Positions 1,764-22,533 of a DNA stretch of 64,000 nt are shown here, piece by piece; within the stretch, counting starts at the first letter, position 1; each line of letters starts with the position of its first letter. The position numbers and the translations under genes are program-made. The stretch lies in the sequence record NC_041917.1; one strand, written 5' to 3'. The notes under the pieces are model-generated. The model saw only the letters and a list, made by a program, of their open reading frames with translations. It did no database searches and was not told the origin of the DNA.

Positions 1764-1879
1764 GCAGTGATCGTCTAGAGGCTTAGGACACGAAAAAGCG
1801 ATTCTTGGTTAAGAATCTTACGGCATCAATAAACTTTCATTTCACGAACGTAACGCAGGTTCGAATCCTGCTCACTGCA
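1764..1879 (+). tRNA. tRNA-Glu(UUC) interrupted by a 43-nt insertion (1793-1835)
   Basis: Acceptor GCAGTGA/TCACTGC; T-arm GCAGG-TTCGAAT-CCTGC; removing the insert gives CG|TTC-ATTTCAC-GAACG. Confidence 0.85.
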
Positions 1880-1897
1880 CTAATATTGGAGTAATAT

Positions 1898-2209: not shown

Positions 2210-2335
2210 GTGGGGTTAGCTCAGTCTGGTAGAGCAGCGAAAGAAAAAACAATGGAATCTTGAAAAGGATTCTAACAGCATTATATCTTCTACTGTAAAT
2301 TCGCAGGTCGGTGAGTTCAAATCCACCATCCCACA
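2210..2335 (+). tRNA. tRNA-Tyr(GUA)-like gene interrupted by a ~51-nt insertion (2242-2292)
   Basis: Acceptor GTGGGGT/ATCCCAC; D-arm GCTC..GAGC; GCGAA|CTGTAAA-TTCGC after removal; short variable loop and bulged T-stem are atypical. Confidence 0.75.
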
Positions 2336-2408
2336 CAAATTTGTCTTGACATGGTGTATCCTGTGTGTTATATTACTATCATCAATTAAACGAGATAGGA
2401 TTTAAATT

Positions 2409-2683: not shown

Positions 2684-3049
2684 ATGAAAGTATTCATTGA
2701 TGATATTCGTGACCCAAAAAATTACTTGACACCAGAACAGGCTGATGGTATTATTTGGATCAAAGAGTGGTGGTCAGCAAAACGCTTTTTGATTGATCAT
2801 GCTGCTGAAATTGAAGTGATTCATTTTGACCATTACATGGATGAACCAACGTTAACTGGTAAAGATTTATTCTTTATGGTTGCTGGGGATTGTATGTGGG
2901 GTGGAAAAGAAACATGGATTAAACTACAGAAAATTTATTTACATTCTTCTGATGTTGATATGGTTGAAGAACTTGTTGAAGAATATAGTACTGAATTGGC
3001 TGAATCTGGTGTTGAGCTTATTGATAACCATCAAGAAAGGAACTACTAA
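2684..3049 (+). CDS. cyclic-phosphate-processing receiver-like domain protein
   Basis: KVFIDDIRDP ... IHFDHYMD ... GKDLF ... IYLHSS pattern recognised by eye. Confidence 0.6.
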   Translation: MKVFIDDIRDPKNYLTPEQADGIIWIKEWWSAKRFLIDHAAEIEVIHFDHYMDEPTLTGKDLFFMVAGDCMWGGKETWIKLQKIYLHSSDVDMVEELVEEYSTELAESGVELIDNHQERNY

Positions 3050-3406
3050 ATGAAAGTTTATGTAGATGATATTCGTAATCCACAAAACCATCTAAGTTCT
3101 GAACAGGCAGCCGATGTAGTGTGGATTAAAGAATGGTGGGATGCACGTAACTTTATCTTTTATAATAATTTAGAAATTGAAGTGATTCATTTAGATAATT
3201 ATCTAGGTGACCGTACCCACACTGGTGCTGATTTACTTCGAATGATTACATATAGGTTTCGCCGTGGGGAATTCCCTAAGTTGAAACAAATTTATCTTCA
3301 CAGTTCTGATAAAGATATTGTGAATAAACTGTATGACACACATATTGAATGTTGTACAGAAGCTGGTGTTGAATTAATTAAAAATTCACGTCCAAACCGT
3401 AGTTAA
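3050..3406 (+). CDS. cyclic-phosphate-processing receiver-like domain protein (paralogue)
   Basis: KVYVDDIRNP ... IHLDNYLG ... GADLL ... IYLHSS; tandem paralogue of 2684..3049. Confidence 0.6.
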   Translation: MKVYVDDIRNPQNHLSSEQAADVVWIKEWWDARNFIFYNNLEIEVIHLDNYLGDRTHTGADLLRMITYRFRRGEFPKLKQIYLHSSDKDIVNKLYDTHIECCTEAGVELIKNSRPNRS

Positions 3407-3412
3407 ACAAAT

Positions 3413-3537
3413 GGCGAGTTAGCTCAGTTGGTAGAGCACGTAGAAACCCAAGATTCAAGTACTTGAATCTTACAGCAACAATAACTCATACACTTTTAAT
3501 GTCGTGGTCGTTGGTTCGAATCCAACACTCGCCGCCA
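3413..3537 (+). tRNA. tRNA-Lys(UUU) interrupted by a 49-nt insertion (3441-3489)
   Basis: Acceptor GGCGAGT/ACTCGCC plus G-CCA; CG|ACA-CTTTTAA-TGTCG after removal; T-arm GTTGG-TTCGAAT-CCAAC. Confidence 0.9.
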
Positions 3538-3554
3538 AATAATAAGGAGTACAT

Positions 3555-3761
3555 ATGTTCCTTGATGAAATTAAATCTGTTCCATTCCCAAGCTATAAAG
3601 CTTTGGAAAAATCACGTAACGAATCGTCTAAGTCTGTTAATCCAACAACTTATGATCGTTATGAAAAGTACCATTATCCTGCTGGTACAGAATTCCGTTT
3701 AGCAAAAGCTATTGATTCTGTAATTGTAAAAATTAAAAAGGTAATTAACTATGTCGGTTAA
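3555..3761 (+). CDS. hypothetical protein
   Basis: AAGGAG RBS. Confidence 0.7.
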   Translation: MFLDEIKSVPFPSYKALEKSRNESSKSVNPTTYDRYEKYHYPAGTEFRLAKAIDSVIVKIKKVINYVG

Positions 3762-4356
3762 ATTCACACCAGTAGTAACTACATTGAAAAACACACTTGT
3801 TGTTGAATTGGAATACGAGCATGGTGATGCAGATGCAACTACCTTTGAATATGTAAATATTCCAGTACTTCCTGAACAAAAAGAAAGTATTGGTGTGTTA
3901 CTTTCAATGATTGAGCACGGTCTTGAATGTCAAAATGCTGAACGTGATGACTACACTATTGACCCGTTCTTTGTTGATGAAACCATTGATTATGATGATA
4001 ATCAAGGTATTCCATTAGTTGGTGTTGAAGTTCGCTTCAGTTTTGATTATAATTCTCCGAAAGAGAAAGGAACTGTCGTTAGCGTTGACCACGAACAGAA
4101 ATATATCATTATTCGTTCATCTACTGGTGAAGAACACCAATTTGACTTTGATGAAATTGAAGATTGTATTGCTTCATCAACAGGTATGATGGTAATGGAT
4201 GGTGGTGAAATTAGCTTTACATATAATGGTATTAATGTTAACATTGGCAATGTTGGTGATTGTACTGTTGATTGTCAATTTAATGCATCGGGTGGTATTA
4301 ATGCGGTTTATTACTACGATGAAAATGCTATTAAATACAGTGTAACTGAATATTAA
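3751..4356 (+). CDS. acidic hypothetical protein
   Basis: GAGG-like RBS, 201 aa. Confidence 0.75.
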   Translation: MSVKFTPVVTTLKNTLVVELEYEHGDADATTFEYVNIPVLPEQKESIGVLLSMIEHGLECQNAERDDYTIDPFFVDETIDYDDNQGIPLVGVEVRFSFDYNSPKEKGTVVSVDHEQKYIIIRSSTGEEHQFDFDEIEDCIASSTGMMVMDGGEISFTYNGINVNIGNVGDCTVDCQFNASGGINAVYYYDENAIKYSVTEY

Positions 4357-7406: not shown

Positions 7407-7523
7407 GGAATCTTACAGCAAAAATACTAATTTTTGATGAAAACGAAACGACGAGGTTCGAATCCTCACCCACGAATTGCCTTATTATTAGTGGGAGCAC
7501 GGTGCTGGATAAACAAAGATTCC
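7407..7523 (+). ncRNA. ACAGCA element bracketing a degenerate permuted tRNA (Ile GAU-like)
   Basis: GGAATCTT-ACAGCA ... AAGATTCC; GAGG-TTCGAAT-CCTC precedes CCCAC..GTGGG. Confidence 0.7.
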
Positions 7524-7584
7524 AGAATTTAAGTTAGAAAATTATGAAACAAATCAAAAATTTGTGGTATAATATAAGAAGTAA

Positions 7585-7691
7585 AGCGGGATGGTGATTG
7601 ATGAAAGCTATTATTTGATTCTAGAAAATCATAATAAGTGAGTAAGAGAACAGGGTTCTTAATATCACGAGGGTTCGATCCCCTGTCGCTG
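7585..7691 (+). pseudogene. degenerate Leu(UAG)-like tRNA
   Basis: TGATT-CTAGAA-AATCA hairpin, variable-arm hairpin, AGGG-TTCGAT-CCCT; poor acceptor and D arms. Confidence 0.35.
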
Positions 7692-7706
7692 CACAAAGCA
7701 ACAAAC

Positions 7707-7824
7707 GAAATCTCACAGCAAACAAAACAATTTTTTTCCTTGCATAGAAAAACGGTGGGGTTCGATTCCCCAACATCCAAGTTGCTTTTAGGATGTGTCT
7801 GGAAGGCCGTATGACAAAGATTTC
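7707..7824 (+). ncRNA. ACAGCA element bracketing a degenerate permuted tRNA (Ala UGC-like)
   Basis: GAAATCT-C-ACAGCA ... AGATTTC; CTTGCAT loop, GGGG-TTCGATT-CCCC, ACATCC..GGATGT. Confidence 0.7.
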
Positions 7825-8000
7825 AGTTCCTATCAACTAAAAAGGATAGCATATAATGAGTTCTGAAGAAAATTTAGAATTATTAAATAAAATAATGAAT
7901 GCCATTGCAAATGGTAAATTGAGTGAAACAATGACTGAACTTGGTTACGAAGTAACTAAGAGTACTGATAAAAGTACAGAATGGTCATTAAAACAATAAT

Positions 8001-8074
8001 GTTCTGTTAGACAAATTGGTAAAGTCACCACCCTTTCAAGGTGGGGTTTACGGGTTCGACCCCCGTACAGAACG
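8001..8074 (+). tRNA. tRNA-Glu(UUC)
   Basis: CCACC-CTTTCAA-GGTGG; acceptor GTTCTGT/ACAGAAC. Confidence 0.95.
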
Positions 8075-8079
8075 CTAAA

Positions 8080-8192
8080 GGATTCGCACAGCAACAATAA
8101 AATCTTAAAATTCAATTGGTGAAAACAACCTTGCAGTTCGATTCTGCTTCCACAATGTGTGGATCTGGTGATGGATAGAAAAAACCGAATCC
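8080..8192 (+). ncRNA. ACAGCA element bracketing a highly degenerate permuted tRNA
   Basis: GGATTCG-C-ACAGCA ... AGAAA..CGAATCC; GCAG-TTCGATT-CTGC then TCCAC-AATGT-GTGGA. Confidence 0.65.
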
Positions 8193-8231
8193 TGATTTTA
8201 ATTAAGAAGTACTAAAGAATTTGATACACAC

Positions 8232-8384
8232 GGATTTATACAGCAAACATAATCCTAAAATAAAACATACGATAATGTTACTAACTCGGAATTCGTTCCC
8301 TTCGTTAGTACTTGGCAACTTGGGTACTTAAATAAGTTGTATCACCTCACGTGTATCGGATTAGAGGTGATTATAAATAAATCC
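8232..8384 (+). ncRNA. ACAGCA element with multi-hairpin cargo
   Basis: GGATTTAT-ACAGCA ... ATAAATCC; internal GGAA-TTCG-TTCC, CAACTT/AAGTTG, ATCACCTC/GAGGTGAT. Confidence 0.65.
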
Positions 8385-8850: not shown

Positions 8851-8925
8851 GGGGTACGTAGCTCAGTCTGGTAGAGCAGCCATGCGAAAACGGTGTGTCG
8901 GTGGTTCGAATCCACTCGCTCCCCA
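8851..8925 (+). pseudogene. pseudo-tRNA (Phe GAA-like, damaged anticodon arm)
   Basis: Good D and T arms; acceptor has 2 mismatches; anticodon stem poorly paired around GCGAAAA. Confidence 0.5.
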
Positions 8926-8929
8926 CTAA

Positions 8930-8986
8930 GGAATCTAGCAGCAACCATAACCCAATCAAACTTTTAATTTGACAATTATGGATTCC
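8930..8986 (+). ncRNA. ACAGCA element carrying an isolated Lys(UUU) anticodon stem-loop
   Basis: GGAATCT-A-GCAGCA ... TCAAA-CTTTTAA-TTTGA ... GGATTCC. Confidence 0.75.
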
Positions 8987-9164
8987 CGTTATTTTTAAGG
9001 ATGTGATATGTCTAAAGAACAAGATGATTTTGAAAAAGAATATCTTATAAGTAAGCGTATTGATCCAAAAGCAACATTTTATATAAAATCTCGTAGAAAG
9101 AAAAATGGTTATAGAACTCGTGAATTGAATAATAAATTTCAAGAATTTCTTAAACGATTTAAAG

Positions 9165-9667: not shown

Positions 9668-10354
9668 ATGTCAAAAAAGACTGATAAAGAAGTAAAAGAT
9701 ACAAAAGAAAAGTACACTGTTGTTAAACACGGCTCACTAACACTAGTGAATACACCAACAGTAAAAACTTTCTATATGAATGGTTCTATTGATCATCCTA
9801 CATTAACTAAGTTCCAAAAGTTCTTAGAAGATACATGTACGGAAAATAATAAAATTGATACCGAAGAAACTGAACGCAAAGAAAAGGATGAATTTAAAAA
9901 GATTCATGATCCTGAATCTAAGCCAGAGTTTGTTCCTGCTAAACGTAAAGTTGAGCGTATCAATCTGGTTATCAATAGTGGTGGTGGTTTAGTTGCAGTA
10001 ATGCTAGAAGTTGTAGCACTAATGAAAACTTCACCAATTCCAATTGATACCTACTGTTTTGGTTCTGCAATGAGTGCAGCTTTCTTTATCTTCTTACATG
10101 GCAAACGCCGTTTTGTTGGTGAAGGTGCCTCATTTATGACACATAGCATTGGTGCTATGGCATGGGATAATGTACCAAACATGACAATTCGTATGGAGTA
10201 CTTGGTTAAACAAAACGAGTACGCACAACAGGAAATTGCTAAACGTACTGGAATTCCTCTTGAAAAATTAAAAGAGAAAGAACATCTCGATTGGTACTTG
10301 ACTGCTGAAGAAGCGTTAGATGTTAAAATCGGTGAATATTTGATCCGAGATTAA
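9668..10354 (+). CDS. clpP: ClpP-like serine protease
   Basis: INSGGG, AMSAA (catalytic Ser), MTHS (His), DWYLTAEEA. Confidence 0.85.
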   Translation: MSKKTDKEVKDTKEKYTVVKHGSLTLVNTPTVKTFYMNGSIDHPTLTKFQKFLEDTCTENNKIDTEETERKEKDEFKKIHDPESKPEFVPAKRKVERINLVINSGGGLVAVMLEVVALMKTSPIPIDTYCFGSAMSAAFFIFLHGKRRFVGEGASFMTHSIGAMAWDNVPNMTIRMEYLVKQNEYAQQEIAKRTGIPLEKLKEKEHLDWYLTAEEALDVKIGEYLIRD

Positions 10355-11015: not shown

Positions 11016-11023
11016 AAAAGTTT

Positions 11024-11077
11024 TAGAATCTAACAGCAATCAAAACTCATTGGATATATGAAAAAAGATAGATTCTA
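11024..11077 (+). ncRNA. minimal ACAGCA element
   Basis: TAGAATCTA-ACAGCA ... TCAT-TGGATAT-ATGA ... TAGATTCTA. Confidence 0.75.
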
Positions 11078-11083
11078 GTATTT

Positions 11084-11156
11084 GGGAATATAATTCAGTT
11101 GGTAGAATGCTCGACCGATAATCGAGTCGCCGCTGGTTCGAGTCCAGCTATTCCCA
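11084..11156 (+). tRNA. tRNA-Ile(GAU)
   Basis: CTCGA-CCGATAA-TCGAG (C33 rather than U33). Confidence 0.9.
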
Positions 11157-11255
11157 CGAAGTAGTTCAGTACTGAAAAATGTACAGTGAAATTATTCAAC
11201 ACTATAGGTAGCACTTTGAATGAATCAGTAAGCCTATAAGTAACTACAATAAATT

Positions 11256-11384
11256 TGGAATTCAACAGCAATTCACTTACTAAAAACAGCTACCTCACGG
11301 TTTGTAGGTTCAAGTCCTACCTTGTACTTTCGAGTACATGTGGTGAAAATGGTAAACACGGCTGTCCAAAAGAAATGAATTCCA
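11256..11384 (+). tRNA. circularly permuted tRNA-Leu (probably UAA) inside an ACAGCA element
   Basis: 3' half (ACAGC, variable arm, T-arm, CTTGTAC) precedes TTTCGA linker and 5' half (GTACATG, D-arm, GCTGT). Confidence 0.85.
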
Positions 11385-11436
11385 GTATTAATTAAGACAT
11401 AAATATTCTTATACACTTTTTTGTAAGGATATAATT

Positions 11437-12036
11437 ATGGAAATGAAAAAGTTGATGGAAGATATTTCTGCCATCATGGAAGGACAACTACCTGGTTATT
11501 ATTATCATGGAAGTTCTGCCCCAATATCAAATTTTAGTGATGAGTTTGTTGGTAGAGGAAATGATGAATACGGTCCGGGAATATATTTTAGTTCAGTTCC
11601 AAATACTTCTATAGGTTATGCAAAAGATGGCGGTTCTAATGGAATGGTATATCAGTGCGAAATCAATTTAAGAAAAGAACTATCTAAAAAAACTAGAGTT
11701 AATAAAGCAGTACTATTAAAATTAATGCAAAATACACCTGATGAAGATGCATATACTAACTGGAATGAAAATAAAAATGTTGCTTATAGAACAGCATTAC
11801 AGGGTTATGTAGATGAAGGTAATATGTATGATGCGTTAATGGGTGTTTGGTACGATTGGTATAGAGAATATCCTGTTCAATTCGTGCGTTCACTAGTACA
11901 GTTAGGATATGATGGATACATATATACTTTTGCAAGCGGTGAACGTTTTATTATAGTATATAATCCAGCAAGTATAAAAGTTGTAAACACATTCAATCCA
12001 GAAGAAGCTATGCAGAAACTGATTGGAAGTGAATAA
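11437..12036 (+). CDS. ADP-ribosyltransferase-like protein
   Basis: YHGS ... GPGIYFS ... ERFIIVYNP pattern of ART-fold (ART-PolyVal-like) domains. Confidence 0.55.
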   Translation: MEMKKLMEDISAIMEGQLPGYYYHGSSAPISNFSDEFVGRGNDEYGPGIYFSSVPNTSIGYAKDGGSNGMVYQCEINLRKELSKKTRVNKAVLLKLMQNTPDEDAYTNWNENKNVAYRTALQGYVDEGNMYDALMGVWYDWYREYPVQFVRSLVQLGYDGYIYTFASGERFIIVYNPASIKVVNTFNPEEAMQKLIGSE

Positions 12037-12043
12037 TAAGATT

Positions 12044-12163
12044 TGGAATTCAACAGCAAATCATTCTAAACCCGTAGCATGTCGTAGGTTCAAGTCCTAC
12101 CAGTACTATCGAGTACTGTAGCTCAGTTGGTAGAGCAGCCACCTTAAAAAGAAATGAATTCCA
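12044..12163 (+). tRNA. circularly permuted class I tRNA inside an ACAGCA element (anticodon uncertain)
   Basis: GTAGC-ATGTC-T-arm-CAGTACT-ATCG-AGTACTG-TA-GCTCAGTTGGTAGAGC-A-GCCAC. Confidence 0.8.
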
Positions 12164-12194
12164 GTATTAATTAAAACAACATGAGTATAAATCA

Positions 12195-12644
12195 ATGTCT
12201 GATAAGCATCAATTTAAAGTAAACATCGGTGATTGGTCACAAGATGGTCATAATCAATATGATGTTTTAGTTCTTAACAGTACTAAACCAGTAGATGAAG
12301 TACAAAAAGCATTTAAAAAAGCTGCAACAGATTTACATTTACTAGTAAATGGTCGTTTTCTAATTGCAGATGAATTTGAAGATTGTAGTCTATCTGAAGA
12401 CCATGCAGAAGTTCTTAAAAATGCAGGTGTAAAATTTGATGATTTAGTGTATAATGATGGCGATGATGAAGAACCAAATTATATTATTGAAGGTTCAAGT
12501 GATATGACTATCCTAGTGATGCGTATCGCCCAACTTGAATTGGACTTTGAATTTGAAATTACGAATGATGCAATTCCGAACTTTAACGGGTTCTGGACAG
12601 AAGAACAAATGCCATCAATCGGATATGGTTTGTATAACATATAA
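12195..12644 (+). CDS. hypothetical protein
   Basis: ORF track. Confidence 0.75.
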   Translation: MSDKHQFKVNIGDWSQDGHNQYDVLVLNSTKPVDEVQKAFKKAATDLHLLVNGRFLIADEFEDCSLSEDHAEVLKNAGVKFDDLVYNDGDDEEPNYIIEGSSDMTILVMRIAQLELDFEFEITNDAIPNFNGFWTEEQMPSIGYGLYNI

Positions 12645-12653
12645 AACAAGTTT

Positions 12654-12718
12654 TGGAATCTAGCAGCACCCATAAAATGAAATCAACTGTTAATTGAAAA
12701 ATTCAAAAATGGATTCCA
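12654..12718 (+). ncRNA. ACAGCA element carrying an isolated Asn(GUU) anticodon stem-loop
   Basis: TGGAATCT-A-GCAGCA ... TCAA-CTGTTAA-TTGA ... GGATTCCA. Confidence 0.7.
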
Positions 12719-12738
12719 GCCTATTTCGGAGTAAAAAA

Positions 12739-13008
12739 ATGTATTATGCTCGATTAGAATATCCAAACAATGGATATGAGATTGAAAGAATACGTCTTAA
12801 AGCCTTAGATCGCAAAAAGTACTATCCAGTAGTTTCGATTGATATTGGTAGTTCAAGTACTCGCATATATCTTGAAGGTGATAAGAATGCATATAATAGT
12901 GTGAACTTTGAATTCTATACCAAACATGGTGATGAATATATTCTTGAAGATATTTTCGAAGACCCTGATTTAAACCCGTACTTGGATGATGATGACGAAG
13001 AATATTAA
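12739..13008 (+). CDS. hypothetical protein
   Basis: ATG 12739 after GGAG. Confidence 0.7.
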   Translation: MYYARLEYPNNGYEIERIRLKALDRKKYYPVVSIDIGSSSTRIYLEGDKNAYNSVNFEFYTKHGDEYILEDIFEDPDLNPYLDDDDEEY

Positions 13009-13076
13009 ATAAAAATACCACAAATAAATGAAACGCTTCAAAAAATTGTGGTATAATATAAGTAAGTTAAACAAGA

Positions 13077-13148
13077 GGTTATGTCGTATAAAGGTTATTA
13101 CGGAGAGCTGTTAACTCTTTTATCTTGGTTCGATTCCAAGCATGACCG
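13077..13148 (+). tRNA. tRNA-Asn(GUU)
   Basis: GAGAG-CTGTTAA-CTCTT; acceptor GGTTATG/CATGACC; atypical D-arm. Confidence 0.85.
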
Positions 13149-13265
13149 CAAAAAGTTAAATTCACCAGGCGTACTATGGTGGGAAAGGTATCATGATACC
13201 AATTCGAATAGAATACGTATTAAACCCTTGAACGGTTTTCTGTAAACTCAATTTAACAAATAATT

Positions 13266-13320
13266 AAGAATCTAACAGCAATAAAAACTCATTCGATTAT
13301 ATGAAAAAAGATAGATTCTT
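13266..13320 (+). ncRNA. minimal ACAGCA element
   Basis: AAGAATCTA-ACAGCA ... TAGATTCTT; near copy of 11024-11077. Confidence 0.75.
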
Positions 13321-13325
13321 GTTTT

Positions 13326-13398
13326 AGGAGTATGGTGTAATTGGTTAGCACACGTGACTTTGACTCACGTAGTTGAGGTTCGAGTCCTTATATTCCTG
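13326..13398 (+). tRNA. tRNA-Gln(UUG)
   Basis: CGTGA-CTTTGAC-TCACG. Confidence 0.95.
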
Positions 13399-13549
13399 CA
13401 AATTAAAATTTCATTCATTTCCTTGTGTGAAACAAGCTGGTATGATTCCCCTTGCTTGTAAAATTATCGAACGGGAACCGCGTTGCACCTGTACAGGTCA
13501 GATTGTAAAGATCGAGTATGTACAGTACTGAGAGCGGCAGTACAACAAA

Positions 13550-13631
13550 GCGGGATTAGCTCAGTGGTAGAGCACTTGCCTTCCAAGCAAGAGGCGAATA
13601 GGTTCCATCGGTTCGAATCCGATATTCCGCT
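13550..13631 (+). tRNA. tRNA-Gly(UCC) with 15-nt variable region
   Basis: CTTGC-CTTCCAA-GCAAG; U73. Confidence 0.9.
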
Positions 13632-13749
13632 CAAACTAAACAAACAATAAGGTGATTTTTATGCTATAGAATCCTAGTACTGGTCCTCCTAAAGAATTTA
13701 ATTCTGATATAAACAACTCAAAATTAAACTACTATAGGAAGAACATACC

Positions 13750-14076
13750 ATGTTAAACAAAGAACAATATATTACTGTAAAAAATACTTGGAAAGCTGTA
13801 AAAGAACATAACATTTTTGATCATGTGATCTATAATGTACTTCGTGGAGTCCCATCTGATACTGGTTTCGCACCAATTACAGACAGGGGTCGTTTACACG
13901 CTAACAACAATGACCCGTTCAATATGTACAATTTCGCAGTTCGTGAAATTCATTATGAATTAAACGAAAAACGGTACAATTACGAAAAGACAGTAAAGCA
14001 TTATTCTGAACTATTCGGCATTGAATTTACAAAAGAACTCATCGAAGAAATTGTTTCTTTGATTAAAGTTAAATAA
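13750..14076 (+). CDS. hypothetical protein
   Basis: AGGAAG RBS. Confidence 0.7.
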   Translation: MLNKEQYITVKNTWKAVKEHNIFDHVIYNVLRGVPSDTGFAPITDRGRLHANNNDPFNMYNFAVREIHYELNEKRYNYEKTVKHYSELFGIEFTKELIEEIVSLIKVK

Positions 14077-14084
14077 CAGAATTA

Positions 14085-14141
14085 AAGAATCCAGCAGCAA
14101 CTAAAACTCATTCGCTTAATATGAAAAAGAAACGGATTCTT
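14085..14141 (+). ncRNA. minimal ACAGCA element
   Basis: AAGAATCC-A-GCAGCA ... AGAAA-C-GGATTCTT. Confidence 0.75.
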
Positions 14142-17070: not shown

Positions 17071-17147
17071 CGGGGTGTAGCTCAGTTGATTAGAGTGCAT
17101 ATTTTGGGGATATGAAGCCGCTGGTTTGAGTCCAGCCATCCCGACCA
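17071..17147 (+). tRNA. tRNA-Pro(UGG)
   Basis: CATAT-TTTGGGG-ATATG, CCA. Confidence 0.9.
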
Positions 17148-17155
17148 ATACAAAA

Positions 17156-17229
17156 TCTCCGATTGGGTCATTGGTTGATCGCATAGTTTGGGACTATGAT
17201 TAAGGGTGTTCGATTCACTCATTGGAGAC
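17156..17229 (+). tRNA. second, divergent tRNA-Pro(UGG)
   Basis: CATAG-TTTGGGA-CTATG; acceptor TCTCCGA/TTGGAGA. Confidence 0.7.
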
Positions 17230-20064: not shown

Positions 20065-20151
20065 GGGTCGTTCACTCAGTTGGTTAGAGTACCGGACTTT
20101 TAATCCGGCGGGTATATCCCATCGAAGGTTCGAATCCTTCACGGCCTACCA
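20065..20151 (+). tRNA. tRNA-Lys(UUU) with long variable arm
   Basis: CCGGA-CTTTTAA-TCCGG then GGG-TATAT-CCC arm; CCA. Confidence 0.9.
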
Positions 20152-22448: not shown

Positions 22449-22533
22449 GGCATCGTCGCATAGCGGCAATTGCAGGAGACTGTAAATCTCTCGCCTTCGG
22501 GCTTCGTTGGTTCGAGTCCAACCGGTGCCACCA
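22449..22533 (+). tRNA. tRNA-Tyr(GUA)
   Basis: GGAGA-CTGTAAA-TCTCT, UUCG variable arm, CCA. Confidence 0.95.

What the first reader, a model, noticed from the sequence alone, without database searches (positions are those of the whole stretch)
3413..3537. tRNA-Lys(UUU) with a 49-nt palindromic insertion at 28/29
Seen: the cleanest case. It is a full canonical cloverleaf with encoded CCA, and CG|ACA-CTTTTAA-TGTCG is restored by removing 3441-3489. The insert is TAGAAACCC, the perfect palindrome AAGATTCAAGTACTTGAATCTT, then ACAGCA. Established: tRNA-Lys(UUU) is the target of the PrrC and PARIS (AriB) anticodon nucleases. Inference: an interrupted precursor could be a nuclease-resistant store of Lys tRNA, matured on demand. 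The other interrupted species (Glu UUC, Tyr GUA) are also known nuclease targets.
Basis: partly seen in the sequence, partly recalled or inferred. Interest (0 to 1): 0.85.

Follow-up and report, generated by a model that had tools for sequence, protein, structure and literature searches.

The report
Short structured intron in phage tRNA-Lys
A jumbo phage carries an otherwise intact lysine tRNA gene split by a 49-base insert, one member of a conserved, previously undescribed family of hairpin-plus-motif elements that also interrupt or circularly permute other tRNA genes in several phage lineages, which points to an unknown cut-and-rejoin RNA pathway in phage-infected bacteria.

Summary
Window 3413-3537 is a tRNA-Lys(UUU) gene with encoded CCA. 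It is interrupted after nucleotide 28 by 49 nt (3441-3489), and removing exactly those bases is the only deletion that restores a canonical cloverleaf.

The window is about 97% identical to Serratia phage BF, a Rak2/GAP32-like jumbo phage. The interrupted gene is syntenic in at least eight relatives. Compensatory changes keep the cloverleaf intact, including the anticodon-stem pairs that lie on either side of the insert.

The insert belongs to a family with this layout: an A-rich 5' tail, a covarying hairpin with core GAWUC, 0-3 nt, an invariant NCNGCA, then a 3' tail. In the window it also interrupts tRNA-Glu (1764-1880) and tRNA-Tyr (2210-2336). The same two half-elements flank circularly permuted tRNA-like bodies and short "empty" units between 7.4 and 14.2 kb. 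Related copies occur in Vibrio phage D479 and in IMG/VR phage contigs.

It is not a group I intron, not a bulge-helix-bulge intron, and matches no Rfam ribozyme.

The most likely reading is a protein-dependent intervening sequence that is cut out and the halves ligated. The enzymes are unknown. Two predicted cyclic-phosphate-processing (cRec) genes lie immediately upstream.

I found no prior description of this element.

The parts
3413..3440 (+). tRNA-Lys(UUU) exon 1: acceptor 5' strand, D arm, nt 26-28
3441..3449 (+). Insert, A-rich 5' tail (TAGAAACCC). Purine/A-rich in all family members, variable in length
3450..3471 (+). Insert hairpin: stem 3450-3458 / 3463-3471, loop GTAC. A perfect 22-nt palindrome with core GAWUC on both strands
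3472..3479 (+). Conserved motif ACAGCAAC (family consensus NCNGCAAY; C, G, C, A invariant in 17 copies)
3480..3489 (+). Insert 3' tail AATAACTCAT; 8-16 nt in the 17 cis copies tabulated (D479e 16 nt), 8-12 nt in all but one of them
3490..3537 (+). tRNA-Lys(UUU) exon 2: nt 29-76, containing the anticodon loop CTTTTAA, T arm, acceptor 3' strand, G73 and encoded CCA
1764..1880 (+). Sibling: tRNA-Glu(UUC) interrupted by a 43-nt member of the family (1793-1835) at the equivalent position in the anticodon stem
2210..2336 (+). Sibling: tRNA-Tyr(GUA) with a short variable region, interrupted by a 51-nt member (2242-2292, boundary ambiguous by 1 nt) at 31/32
2684..3406 (+). Two tandem paralogous genes (2684-3049, 3050-3406) with the Pfam cREC_REC 'cyclic-phosphate processing receiver' domain. 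They end 6 nt before the tRNA, and the synteny is kept in all Rak2-like relatives examined. A possible, unproven RNA end-healing role
12043..12164 (+). Permuted unit. Order: hairpin 3' strand, ACAGCAAA, tail, anticodon-stem 3' strand, T arm, acceptor stem closed by ATCG, D arm, anticodon-stem 5' strand plus loop CTTAAAA, A-rich tail, hairpin 5' strand
11255..11385 (+). Permuted unit with a long variable arm (Leu-UAA-like) and the same flanking half-elements
7407..8384 (+). Four further permuted-order units (7407-7523, 7707-7824, 8079-8193, 8232-8384). Three of the bodies (7407-7523, 7707-7824, 8079-8193) have a T arm and a closed acceptor-like stem; the 130-nt body of 8232-8384 does not look tRNA-like. 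ARAGORN does not recognise any of the four as a tRNA after rotation
8929..8997 (+). Short unit in permuted order, enclosing only a Lys(UUU)-type anticodon stem-loop, CAAACTTTTAATTTG
11023..14141 (+). Four short 'empty' units in permuted order (11023-11078, 12653-12719, 13265-13321, 14085-14141). Two of them end 4-5 nt before tRNA-Ile and tRNA-Gln

Best explanation
3413-3537 is a functional tRNA-Lys(UUU) gene carrying a 49-nt intervening sequence of a phage-specific class.

The proposed route is as follows. The gene is transcribed, probably together with the upstream cRec genes. The tRNA body folds. The insert protrudes from the 5' strand of the anticodon stem as a hairpin carried on two single-stranded tails. 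The hairpin (core GAWUC) together with the adjacent NCNGCAAY motif is the handle recognised by an endonuclease. The RNA is cut at both exon borders, and an RNA ligase joins the two halves, which the acceptor and anticodon stems hold together.

The distances from the handle to the two cut sites vary, and the insert sits at different tRNA positions in different genes (26/27, 28/29, 29/30, 31/32, 38/39). The folded tRNA body, not a ruler from the motif, must therefore set the exact junctions.

The same two half-elements in swapped order would circularise a permuted precursor. This is formally like the permuted tRNA genes of red algae, but it uses a different signal.

Shown: the gene anatomy, selection on the exons and on the hairpin, the family, and its distribution.

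Inferred: that excision happens at all, that proteins rather than the RNA do it, and that the ends are 2',3'-cyclic phosphate/5'-OH healed by cRec/kinase and sealed by a phage RNA ligase.
For: A single deletion restores a canonical Lys cloverleaf.

The virtual product aligns without a gap across the junction to ordinary phage tRNAs.

In 7 distinct orthologues, 91% of cloverleaf cells pair and 13 pairs changed on both sides. These include 30-40 and 31-39, whose strands are separated from 27-28 by the insert.

The insert hairpin covaries. All 9 pairs show changes on both sides, G.U pairs are frequent, and 0 of 500 shuffles reach the observed score. RNAalifold finds the same stem.

C, G, C and A of the motif are invariant in 17 copies drawn from Eneladusvirus, Mimasvirus and an unrelated Vibrio phage.

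All copies lie on the transcribed strand.

Permuted units keep the T-stem and the split anticodon stem by compensatory changes between the window, Yen9-04 and GAP32.

IMG/VR phage contigs carry tandem permuted tRNAs that give good cloverleaves on joining.

Two cRec genes abut the tRNA. In another phage, cRec overlaps an RNA ligase gene. The literature predicts that cRec opens 2',3'-cyclic phosphate ends (PMC7824862). Relatives encode two RNA ligases (PMC5259590).
Against: There are no RNA data, so excision is inferred and not seen.

There is no sequence consensus at either junction, and no fixed spacing from the motif. No known endonuclease fits.

Vibrio phage D479 has the inserts but no detectable cRec. 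Klebsiella phage Eowyn has cRec but no tRNA beside it. The cRec link is therefore weak.

Uninterrupted Lys(UUU), Glu(UUC) and Tyr(GUA) genes exist in the same window, so the interrupted copies are not strictly needed.

Some spliced products would have odd features: C33 in D479d, A34 anticodons, and discriminators that vary in the permuted units.
Confidence: 0.55

Rival explanations
1. The RNA is never spliced. The interrupted and permuted units are tRNA-like non-coding RNAs, either Y-RNA-like scaffolds or decoys. The hairpin-plus-motif arm binds a protein, and the tRNA-like body acts as bait or platform, for example for tRNA-targeting nucleases or for RNA-repair enzymes.
For: Rfam's Y RNA-like family YrlA matches 12077-12139 at 40 bits. 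The match has the same permuted order: T arm, closed acceptor stem, D arm. In the permuted units the acceptor stem is closed by a 4-6 nt loop and the 'discriminator' is not conserved. Four permuted-order units are not recognised as tRNAs even after rotation.
Against: The cis copies keep complete, canonical anticodon stem-loops whose stems only become continuous once the insert is removed, and these pairs covary. The YrlA match is below the family's gathering score (69), and the Ro-binding stem is not matched. No TROVE/Ro60 gene was found among the window ORFs I scanned.
Confidence: 0.15
2. These are pseudogenes. A miniature palindromic mobile or recombination-prone DNA element inserted into tRNA genes and inactivated redundant copies. 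Nothing functional is made.
For: GenBank annotates the BF and Yen9-04 copies as pseudo or undetermined tRNAs. Intact isoacceptor genes exist elsewhere in the window. Short 'empty' units look like decayed copies.
Against: Exons stay intact and covary across genera with about 74-78% DNA identity and in an unrelated Vibrio phage. The hairpin uses G.U pairs, which argues for an RNA helix rather than a DNA one. The strand bias is absolute. Permuted arrangements keep matched acceptor strands.
Confidence: 0.12
3. The element is a new small self-cleaving or self-splicing ribozyme. The hairpin, the NCNGCA strand and the GAAA-rich strand form the catalytic core, and ligation is by a host or phage ligase or by reversal of the cleavage.
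For: A conserved internal-loop-like arrangement next to a helix. Neighbouring cRec genes would fit ribozyme-type 2',3'-cyclic phosphate ends.
Against: Only four nucleotides are invariant, and the A-rich strand varies in both length and sequence. The cut sites are not at a fixed distance from the motif. No Rfam ribozyme family matches, even at E<=10. Alignment folding finds no structure beyond the hairpin.
Confidence: 0.08
4. The main product is the excised element itself, or the element is a transcript-processing signal. On this view tRNA genes merely host many copies of a hairpin RNA with a common single-stranded seed (NCNGCAAY...), or of a cleavage site that dissects the long tRNA-region transcripts.
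For: The element occurs without any tRNA body in five short units. Two of these lie just upstream of normal tRNAs, and they are identical or nearly so in Yen9-04. The most conserved part is the 3' strand plus motif, AGAWUC-UU-NCNGCAAY.
Against: No complementary target or antisense copy was found in the window. This reading does not explain why the flanking exons are kept in a form that can be spliced.
Confidence: 0.1

Closest known systems
Archaeal/eukaryal protein-spliced tRNA introns (bulge-helix-bulge) and circularly permuted tRNA genes (Cyanidioschyzon merolae, some green algae, Thermofilum)
   Same: A short intron without coding capacity. Non-canonical positions in and around the anticodon arm. 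The same signal is used in cis (intron) and in swapped order around a permuted tRNA body, which implies cutting at two sites, ligation, and a circular intermediate.
   Different: There is no bulge-helix-bulge: the borders lie in long, unequal single-stranded tails (about 3-16 nt on the 5' side; 8-16 nt between the motif and the 3' junction, i.e. about 16-27 nt from the hairpin to that junction). A conserved sequence motif (NCNGCAAY) and a GAWUC helix are present. The hosts are bacteria, which lack the splicing endonuclease.
'Enigmatic' tRNA introns of Lak megaphages (PMC6784885)
   Same: Phage tRNA genes with short, highly conserved inserts of unknown class that Rfam could not classify.
   Different: The Lak phages are a different lineage infecting Prevotella. 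No sequence comparison was made here. No motif, permuted genes or mechanism were reported for them.
Bacterial and phage group I introns in tRNA genes
   Same: They interrupt tRNA genes of bacteria or phages in the anticodon region.
   Different: Group I introns are 200 nt or longer, self-splice, sit in the anticodon loop and are detected by Rfam. This insert is 43-51 nt in the window's three copies (about 40-55 nt across the family), lies in the stem, and gives no such match.
Bacterial Y RNA-like YrlA tRNA mimics
   Same: The permuted units have the YrlA order: T arm, closed acceptor stem, D arm, with the ends at the anticodon side.
   Different: The score is below the gathering threshold. The outer stem and motif differ from the Ro-binding stem. 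The cis copies are complete tRNAs.
T4-type tRNA repair (Pnkp + Rnl1 after anticodon nuclease PrrC)
   Same: Phage enzymes heal and seal breaks in the anticodon arm of tRNA-Lys. The genomic neighbourhood here contains predicted cyclic-phosphate-processing genes, and relatives encode RNA ligases.
   Different: In T4 repair the break is made by a host defence nuclease in a mature tRNA. Here the discontinuity is encoded in the gene.

Membership tests
tRNA (Rfam RF00005), isoacceptor Lys(UUU) | Cloverleaf with 7-bp acceptor, D, anticodon and T arms, a 7-nt anticodon loop with U33 and a purine at 37, and conserved D/T-loop residues | tested here: met
   48.6 bits against a gathering score of 29, with the insert present. 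A canonical 76-nt cloverleaf after removing 3441-3489.
Group I intron | P1-P9 catalytic core, usually more than 200 nt, located in the anticodon loop, matching Rfam models | tested here: not met
   The insert is 49 nt. There is no Rfam match at E<=10. It lies in the stem, between nt 28 and 29.
Bulge-helix-bulge (archaeal/eukaryal) tRNA intron | Two 3-nt bulges, each holding a splice site, separated by a 4-bp helix | tested here: not met
   By inspection and folding, the borders lie in 9-nt and 18-nt unpaired tails. No 4-bp helix is possible between the start of the insert and exon 2.
Known small self-cleaving ribozymes (hammerhead, hairpin, twister, twister-sister, pistol, hatchet, HDV-like) | Family-specific conserved cores, as modelled in Rfam | tested here: not met
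   cmscan of 3400-3550 at E<=10 returns only the tRNA and noise.
Circularly permuted tRNA gene | The 3' half lies upstream of the 5' half on one strand, with matched acceptor strands and a processing signal formed by the outer flanks | tested here: met
   This applies to sibling units and not to 3413-3537 itself: 12043-12164 and 11255-11385 and IMG/VR loci L011 and L012. Whether they mature into tRNAs was not testable.
Circularly permuted tRNA gene | Expression through a circular RNA intermediate | not testable with these tools
   This needs RNA from infected cells.
YrlA / bacterial Y RNA | Rfam gathering score, a Ro60-binding stem, and a neighbouring rsr (TROVE) gene | tested here: not met
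   40.3 bits against 69, with only model positions 24-84 matched. No TROVE hit among the ORFs scanned. This concerns the permuted sibling, not the Lys gene.
cRec (PF20274) RNA-end processing proteins, the neighbours of the tRNA | A match above the Pfam gathering score | tested here: met
   43.2 and 33.7 bits against a cut-off of 27. The catalytic activity is a published prediction only.

The most novel reading that the evidence does not exclude
Jumbo phages of Gammaproteobacteria have their own tRNA splicing and circularisation system, not homologous to those of archaea and eukaryotes. A dedicated RNA signal (GAWUC helix plus NCNGCAAY) directs an unidentified endonuclease and a phage RNA-repair ligase to assemble tRNAs from interrupted, permuted and perhaps modular pieces. 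One such piece may be the lone Lys anticodon stem-loop cassette at 8924-9000. Such a system could let the phage re-target or replace anticodon arms quickly in the arms race with anticodon nucleases.
Probability: 0.3. Interest if true: 0.9.

Novelty: new variant of a known kind. Interest (0 to 1): 0.8.

Why it matters
Bacteria and their viruses are thought to have only self-splicing group I introns in tRNA genes. Protein-spliced tRNA introns and permuted tRNA genes are regarded as archaeal and eukaryal features.

A conserved, structured class of about 40-55-nt inserts, found together with permuted tRNA-like genes in several phage lineages, would imply an unrecognised RNA cut-and-join pathway in infected bacteria. 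It would give a physiological substrate to phage RNA ligases, kinases and cRec proteins, which are currently seen only as repair enzymes.

It also has a practical side. tRNA finders in default bacterial mode miss or mislabel these genes, so phage tRNA repertoires are under-counted.

If maturation is controlled, it could bear on how phages escape tRNA-cleaving defences such as PrrC, PARIS, retrons, Septu and OLD.

Tried and rejected
- **Known RNA families.** An Rfam scan of 1-30 kb and a permissive scan of 3400-3550 found only tRNA, a sub-threshold YrlA match and noise.
- **Bulge-helix-bulge, hammerhead, hairpin, k-turn and loop-E readings of the tails.** I checked these by eye against the aligned copies and rejected them because the required residues or pairings are absent.
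- **A neighbouring protein as the shared partner.**
  - The ORF upstream of D479's interrupted tRNA is unrelated to the window's cRec.
  - tblastn with cRec does not find D479.
  - Eowyn's cRec has no tRNA next to it.
  - Pfam and PHROGs on about 45 ORFs from the window and from L011 gave no nuclease or ligase near the arrays.
  - tblastn with a cRec-linked RNA ligase returned 655 records, but the listing did not show whether BF or D479 is among them.
- **An antisense or guide copy of the motif.** There is none in the window.
- **IMG/VR pattern scans with 14 specified bases.** Most hits were chance. My first regex-based filter was too loose and I replaced it with a covariance model.
- **A bacterial genome scan for the exon 1-insert junction.** It gave one hit, by chance, inside what looks like coding sequence.
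- **Rotated constructs of four permuted-order units** (7407-7523, 7707-7824, 8079-8193, 8232-8384). ARAGORN did not call any of them as tRNAs.
- **Literature.** Nine searches found no description of this intron class or of permuted tRNA genes in phages.

Full report
**What the window is.** Region 2800-4200 is 96.9% identical to Serratia phage BF and 93-96% identical to the Erwinia phages pEa_SNUABM_12/19/44/47/49/50 (genus Eneladusvirus). It is 74-78% identical to Yersinia phage fHe-Yen9-04, Pectobacterium phage CBB and Cronobacter phage GAP32, and related to Erwinia phage Kaldavass and Xanthomonas phage XbC2. These are all Rak2-like jumbo phages of about 355-378 kb. The first 27 kb of the window is their dispersed tRNA region: ARAGORN finds 21 tRNAs there in default mode.

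**The observation.**
- Exon 1 (3413-3440) supplies the acceptor 5' strand, the D arm and C27-G28.
- The insert is 3441-3489.
- Exon 2 (3490-3537) supplies A29-C30-A31, the loop CTTTTAA, T39-G40-T41-C42-G43, a 5-nt variable loop, the T arm, the acceptor 3' strand, G73 and CCA.
- Positions 3450-3471 are a perfect 22-nt palindrome. As RNA this is a 9-bp stem with a 4-nt loop.

Rfam's tRNA model matches at 48.6 bits despite the 62 nt it has to skip. Default ARAGORN misses the gene. In intron mode it finds the gene but forces the intron into the loop and calls the anticodon 'tta'.

I tried every deletion of 30-61 nt starting after nt 22-44. Other deletions also give a 5-bp stem with different anticodons, but without U33 plus a purine at 37. 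Only 'after nt 28, 49 nt' gives a 5-bp anticodon stem, U33 and a purine at 37 together, and it reads Lys(UUU). The product is drawn as a textbook 76-nt cloverleaf. It aligns end to end, across the junction, with ordinary uninterrupted phage tRNAs.

**Is the gene alive?** A long tRNA of 115-127 nt lies at the same place in BF, pEa_SNUABM_12, Yen9-04, CBB, GAP32, Kaldavass and XbC2. In each case it directly follows two paralogous genes of about 120 codons. A similar gene is present in the unrelated 258-kb Vibrio phage D479.

On the alignment of these genes I imposed the cloverleaf of the spliced form. Ninety-one percent of cells pair, against 77% in shuffles. Thirteen pairs have changes on both sides, and no shuffle or slid register comes close. 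The acceptor, D, T and upper anticodon-stem pairs are kept at 100%. Pairs 30-40 and 31-39 each changed on both sides in 4 of 7 distinct sequences.

This pattern is what purifying selection on an RNA produces, where the anticodon stem is only continuous once the insert is gone. It argues against a dead gene.

**The insert is a family.** In the window, tRNA-Glu(UUC) at 1764-1880 and tRNA-Tyr(GUA) at 2210-2336 carry 43-nt and 51-nt inserts of the same design. Both give canonical cloverleaves when the insert is removed.

I tabulated seventeen cis copies from the window, Yen9-04, CBB, GAP32, Kaldavass, XbC2 and D479. They share four features:
- a purine/A-rich 5' tail ((UA)(U)GAAA...);
- a 5-9 bp hairpin;
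- 0-3 nt;
- the motif NCNGCA(A/U)(C/U), in which C, G, C and A are invariant, followed by an 8-16 nt A/U-rich tail (8-12 nt in all copies but one).

The hairpin covaries. All nine pairs show changes on both sides, G.U pairs are common, and 0 of 500 shuffles reach the observed score. RNAalifold predicts the same stem and nothing else. In the Rak2-like copies the helix core reads GAWUC on both strands, and its central pair flips A-U/U-A in 7 versus 7 sequences. In D479 the helix sequence differs but the pairing is kept.

A covariance model built from these copies finds exactly the three cis copies in the 64-kb window at E of 1e-8 or lower. The 16-mer AGAATCTTACAGCAAC, allowing up to 3 mismatches, occurs 7 times. 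All are on the + strand, against 0.85 expected.

The strand bias and the G.U pairs point to function at the RNA level and not the DNA level.

**The same half-elements in swapped order.** Between 7.4 and 14.2 kb the 3' half (hairpin 3' strand plus motif plus tail) repeatedly comes first. The 5' half (A-rich tail plus complementary hairpin strand) follows 28-130 nt later.

In 12043-12164 the enclosed 94 nt read, in order:
- anticodon-stem 3' strand;
- variable loop;
- T arm;
- CAGTACT-ATCG-AGTACTG, a closed acceptor stem;
- D arm;
- anticodon-stem 5' strand and the loop CTTAAAA.

This is a circular permutation of a tRNA. Unit 11255-11385 is similar and has a long variable arm. ARAGORN accepts both as tRNAs after rotation.

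Their orthologues in Yen9-04 and GAP32 show compensatory changes. The T stem goes from GTAGG/CCTAC to GCAGG/CCTGC, and the split anticodon stem from GCCAC/GTAGC to GTCGC/GCAAC.

IMG/VR contigs (L011 = L014 from a 246-kb contig, L012, L016) carry tandem permuted units with helix AAGAUUR/YAAUCUU, motif UCAGCAAY and 5' tail UAUGAAAAAAAG. Joined virtually, these give Asn(GUU), Tyr(GUA) and Lys(CUU) cloverleaves.

Four other permuted-order units in the window are not called as tRNAs. Three of them (7407-7523, 7707-7824, 8079-8193) have T arms and closed acceptor-like stems; the 130-nt body of 8232-8384 does not look tRNA-like.

Five short units contain little or nothing between the half-elements. 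One of them, 8924-9000, holds just a Lys(UUU)-type anticodon stem-loop.

Rfam's Y RNA-like family YrlA matches 12077-12139 at 40 bits, below its threshold of 69, because YrlA has the same permuted tRNA-like topology. I therefore keep a rival reading open, in which the permuted units are tRNA mimics rather than tRNA genes.

**What it is not.** It is not a group I intron: it is only 49 nt and has no Rfam match. It is not any Rfam ribozyme, even at E<=10. It is not a bulge-helix-bulge intron, because the borders lie in long, unequal unpaired tails and no 4-bp central helix is possible. The hairpin is not an intrinsic terminator either, since no T run follows it.

**How it probably works.** Across the family the insert sits at 26/27, 28/29, 29/30, 31/32 or 38/39. 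From the GCA of the motif to the 3' junction is about 10-13 nt in the seven cis copies I measured (the D479e tail is longer). The 5' tail is about 3-16 nt across the family (7-12 nt in the copies whose 5' junction I placed by hand). There is no sequence consensus at either junction.

The helix-plus-motif therefore looks like a recognition or assembly handle, and the folded tRNA body defines where the ends are made and joined. I think the most likely route is two endonucleolytic cuts followed by ligation of the halves, which the acceptor and anticodon stems hold together. In permuted order, the same reaction would produce a circle that is later opened at the acceptor end.

Which enzymes do this is not shown. 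Three pieces of circumstantial evidence bear on it:
- The two genes that end 6 nt upstream of the tRNA (2684-3049 and 3050-3406, 47% identical to each other) both match Pfam cREC_REC, the 'cyclic-phosphate processing receiver domain'. Iyer et al. (PMC7824862) predicted that this family opens 2',3'-cyclic phosphate RNA ends and noted that it is linked to RNA ligases.
- In Enterobacter phage FENT2 a cRec gene overlaps the end of an RNA ligase gene.
- The CBB paper reports two RNA ligases in this phage group.

Against a specific link, D479 has the inserts but no detectable cRec, and Eowyn's cRec has no tRNA next to it.

A strong sigma-70-like promoter at 2346-2374 could drive the cRec genes and the tRNA as one transcript.

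**Function of being interrupted.** I have no evidence on this. The window also encodes uninterrupted Glu(UUC) at 8001, Lys(UUU) at 20065 (with an unusual 15-nt variable arm) and Tyr(GUA) at 22449.

Orthologous interrupted genes change anticodon. The Lys locus reads UUU in the window, BF, CBB and GAP32, GAU in Yen9-04, and UUC in Kaldavass and XbC2. The Glu locus reads UCA, an opal reader, in Yen9-04.

HNH homing-endonuclease genes lie immediately downstream of this tRNA in Yen9-04, and within the homologous region in pEa_SNUABM_50. The insert might therefore also protect the gene from such enzymes, as in collaborative homing. That is my inference and it is untested.

**Prior knowledge.** GenBank records already show these genes as 'tRNA-Pseudo', 'tRNA-Undet', 'tRNA-OTHER', 'tRNA-Lys' or 'tRNA-Phe', with lengths of 114-127 nt, but without comment.

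The Lak megaphage paper (PMC6784885) reported 'enigmatic introns' in phage tRNAs and said none had been reported before. Nine full-text searches found no description of this motif, of short non-group-I introns in these phages, or of permuted tRNA genes in any phage. A scan of one genome per bacterial species for the exon 1-insert junction found only a chance match.

**Verdict.** The finding is real and is more interesting than the single locus suggests. It leads to a conserved, structured, strand-specific RNA element that interrupts or permutes tRNA genes in several jumbo-phage lineages. Splicing itself, its chemistry and its enzymes remain to be shown experimentally.

Noticed in passing
window 20065-20151: An uninterrupted tRNA-Lys(UUU) of 87 nt with a 15-nt stem-loop variable arm (cgggtatatcccatc). 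This is unusual for a Lys tRNA, which is normally class I. tRNA-Gly(UCC) at 13550-13632 likewise has an extended variable region.
   Followed up: no
L009 (Yersinia phage fHe-Yen9-04) 3923-4036 and 5756-5876; L007/L008 1600-1717: Orthologues of the interrupted genes change anticodon. The Glu(UUC) locus reads UCA (an opal-reading loop, ATTCAAC) in Yen9-04. The Lys(UUU) locus reads GAU in Yen9-04 and UUC in Kaldavass and XbC2.
   Followed up: partly
window 8924-9000: A short unit in permuted order encloses only a Lys(UUU)-type anticodon stem-loop (CAAACTTTTAATTTG). It lies directly after a degenerate tRNA-like sequence (8852-8924; Rfam tRNA 36 bits; odd anticodon arm; imperfect acceptor).
   Followed up: partly
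window 11437-12036: A gene with an ART-PolyVal ADP-ribosyltransferase domain (E 2e-11) lies between the two best permuted tRNA-like units.
   Followed up: no
window 9668-10354: A ClpP-like protease domain protein (E 2e-19) lies inside the tRNA region.
   Followed up: no
L248 (Enterobacter phage FENT2) 443-3259: An operon reading phosphoesterase, small ORF (top hit to a GAP32 protein), RNA ligase, cRec (overlapping the end of the ligase gene), small ATPase. This looks like a compact RNA-repair cassette.
   Followed up: no
L009 5942-6574 and pEa_SNUABM_50: An HNH homing-endonuclease gene is inserted immediately downstream of the interrupted tRNA in Yen9-04, and an annotated putative HNH endonuclease lies within the homologous region of pEa_SNUABM_50 (exact position not inspected). 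Neither is present in the window. This suggests a homing hot spot next to the tRNA.
   Followed up: no
L102 2690-2850 (- strand), IMG/VR contig 3300025487_000640: Two tandem hairpin-plus-ACAGCAAC/ACAGCAAG elements (GATTCC..GGAATC, GGTTCC..GGAAGC) with no recognisable tRNA halves around them. These appear to be solo copies of the element in another phage.
   Followed up: no
L012 (- strand) 1586-1635 and flanks: A cis-interrupted Tyr(GUA)-like tRNA with an almost absent D arm (GGGGAAG TT AAAATGTTGG...). It resembles the reduced bodies of window units 7407-7523 and 7707-7824.
   Followed up: no
window 17071-17229: Two tRNA-Pro(UGG) genes lie 9 nt apart. The second scores weakly (44 bits), and in Yen9-04 the counterpart is annotated as a pseudo-tRNA.
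   Followed up: no
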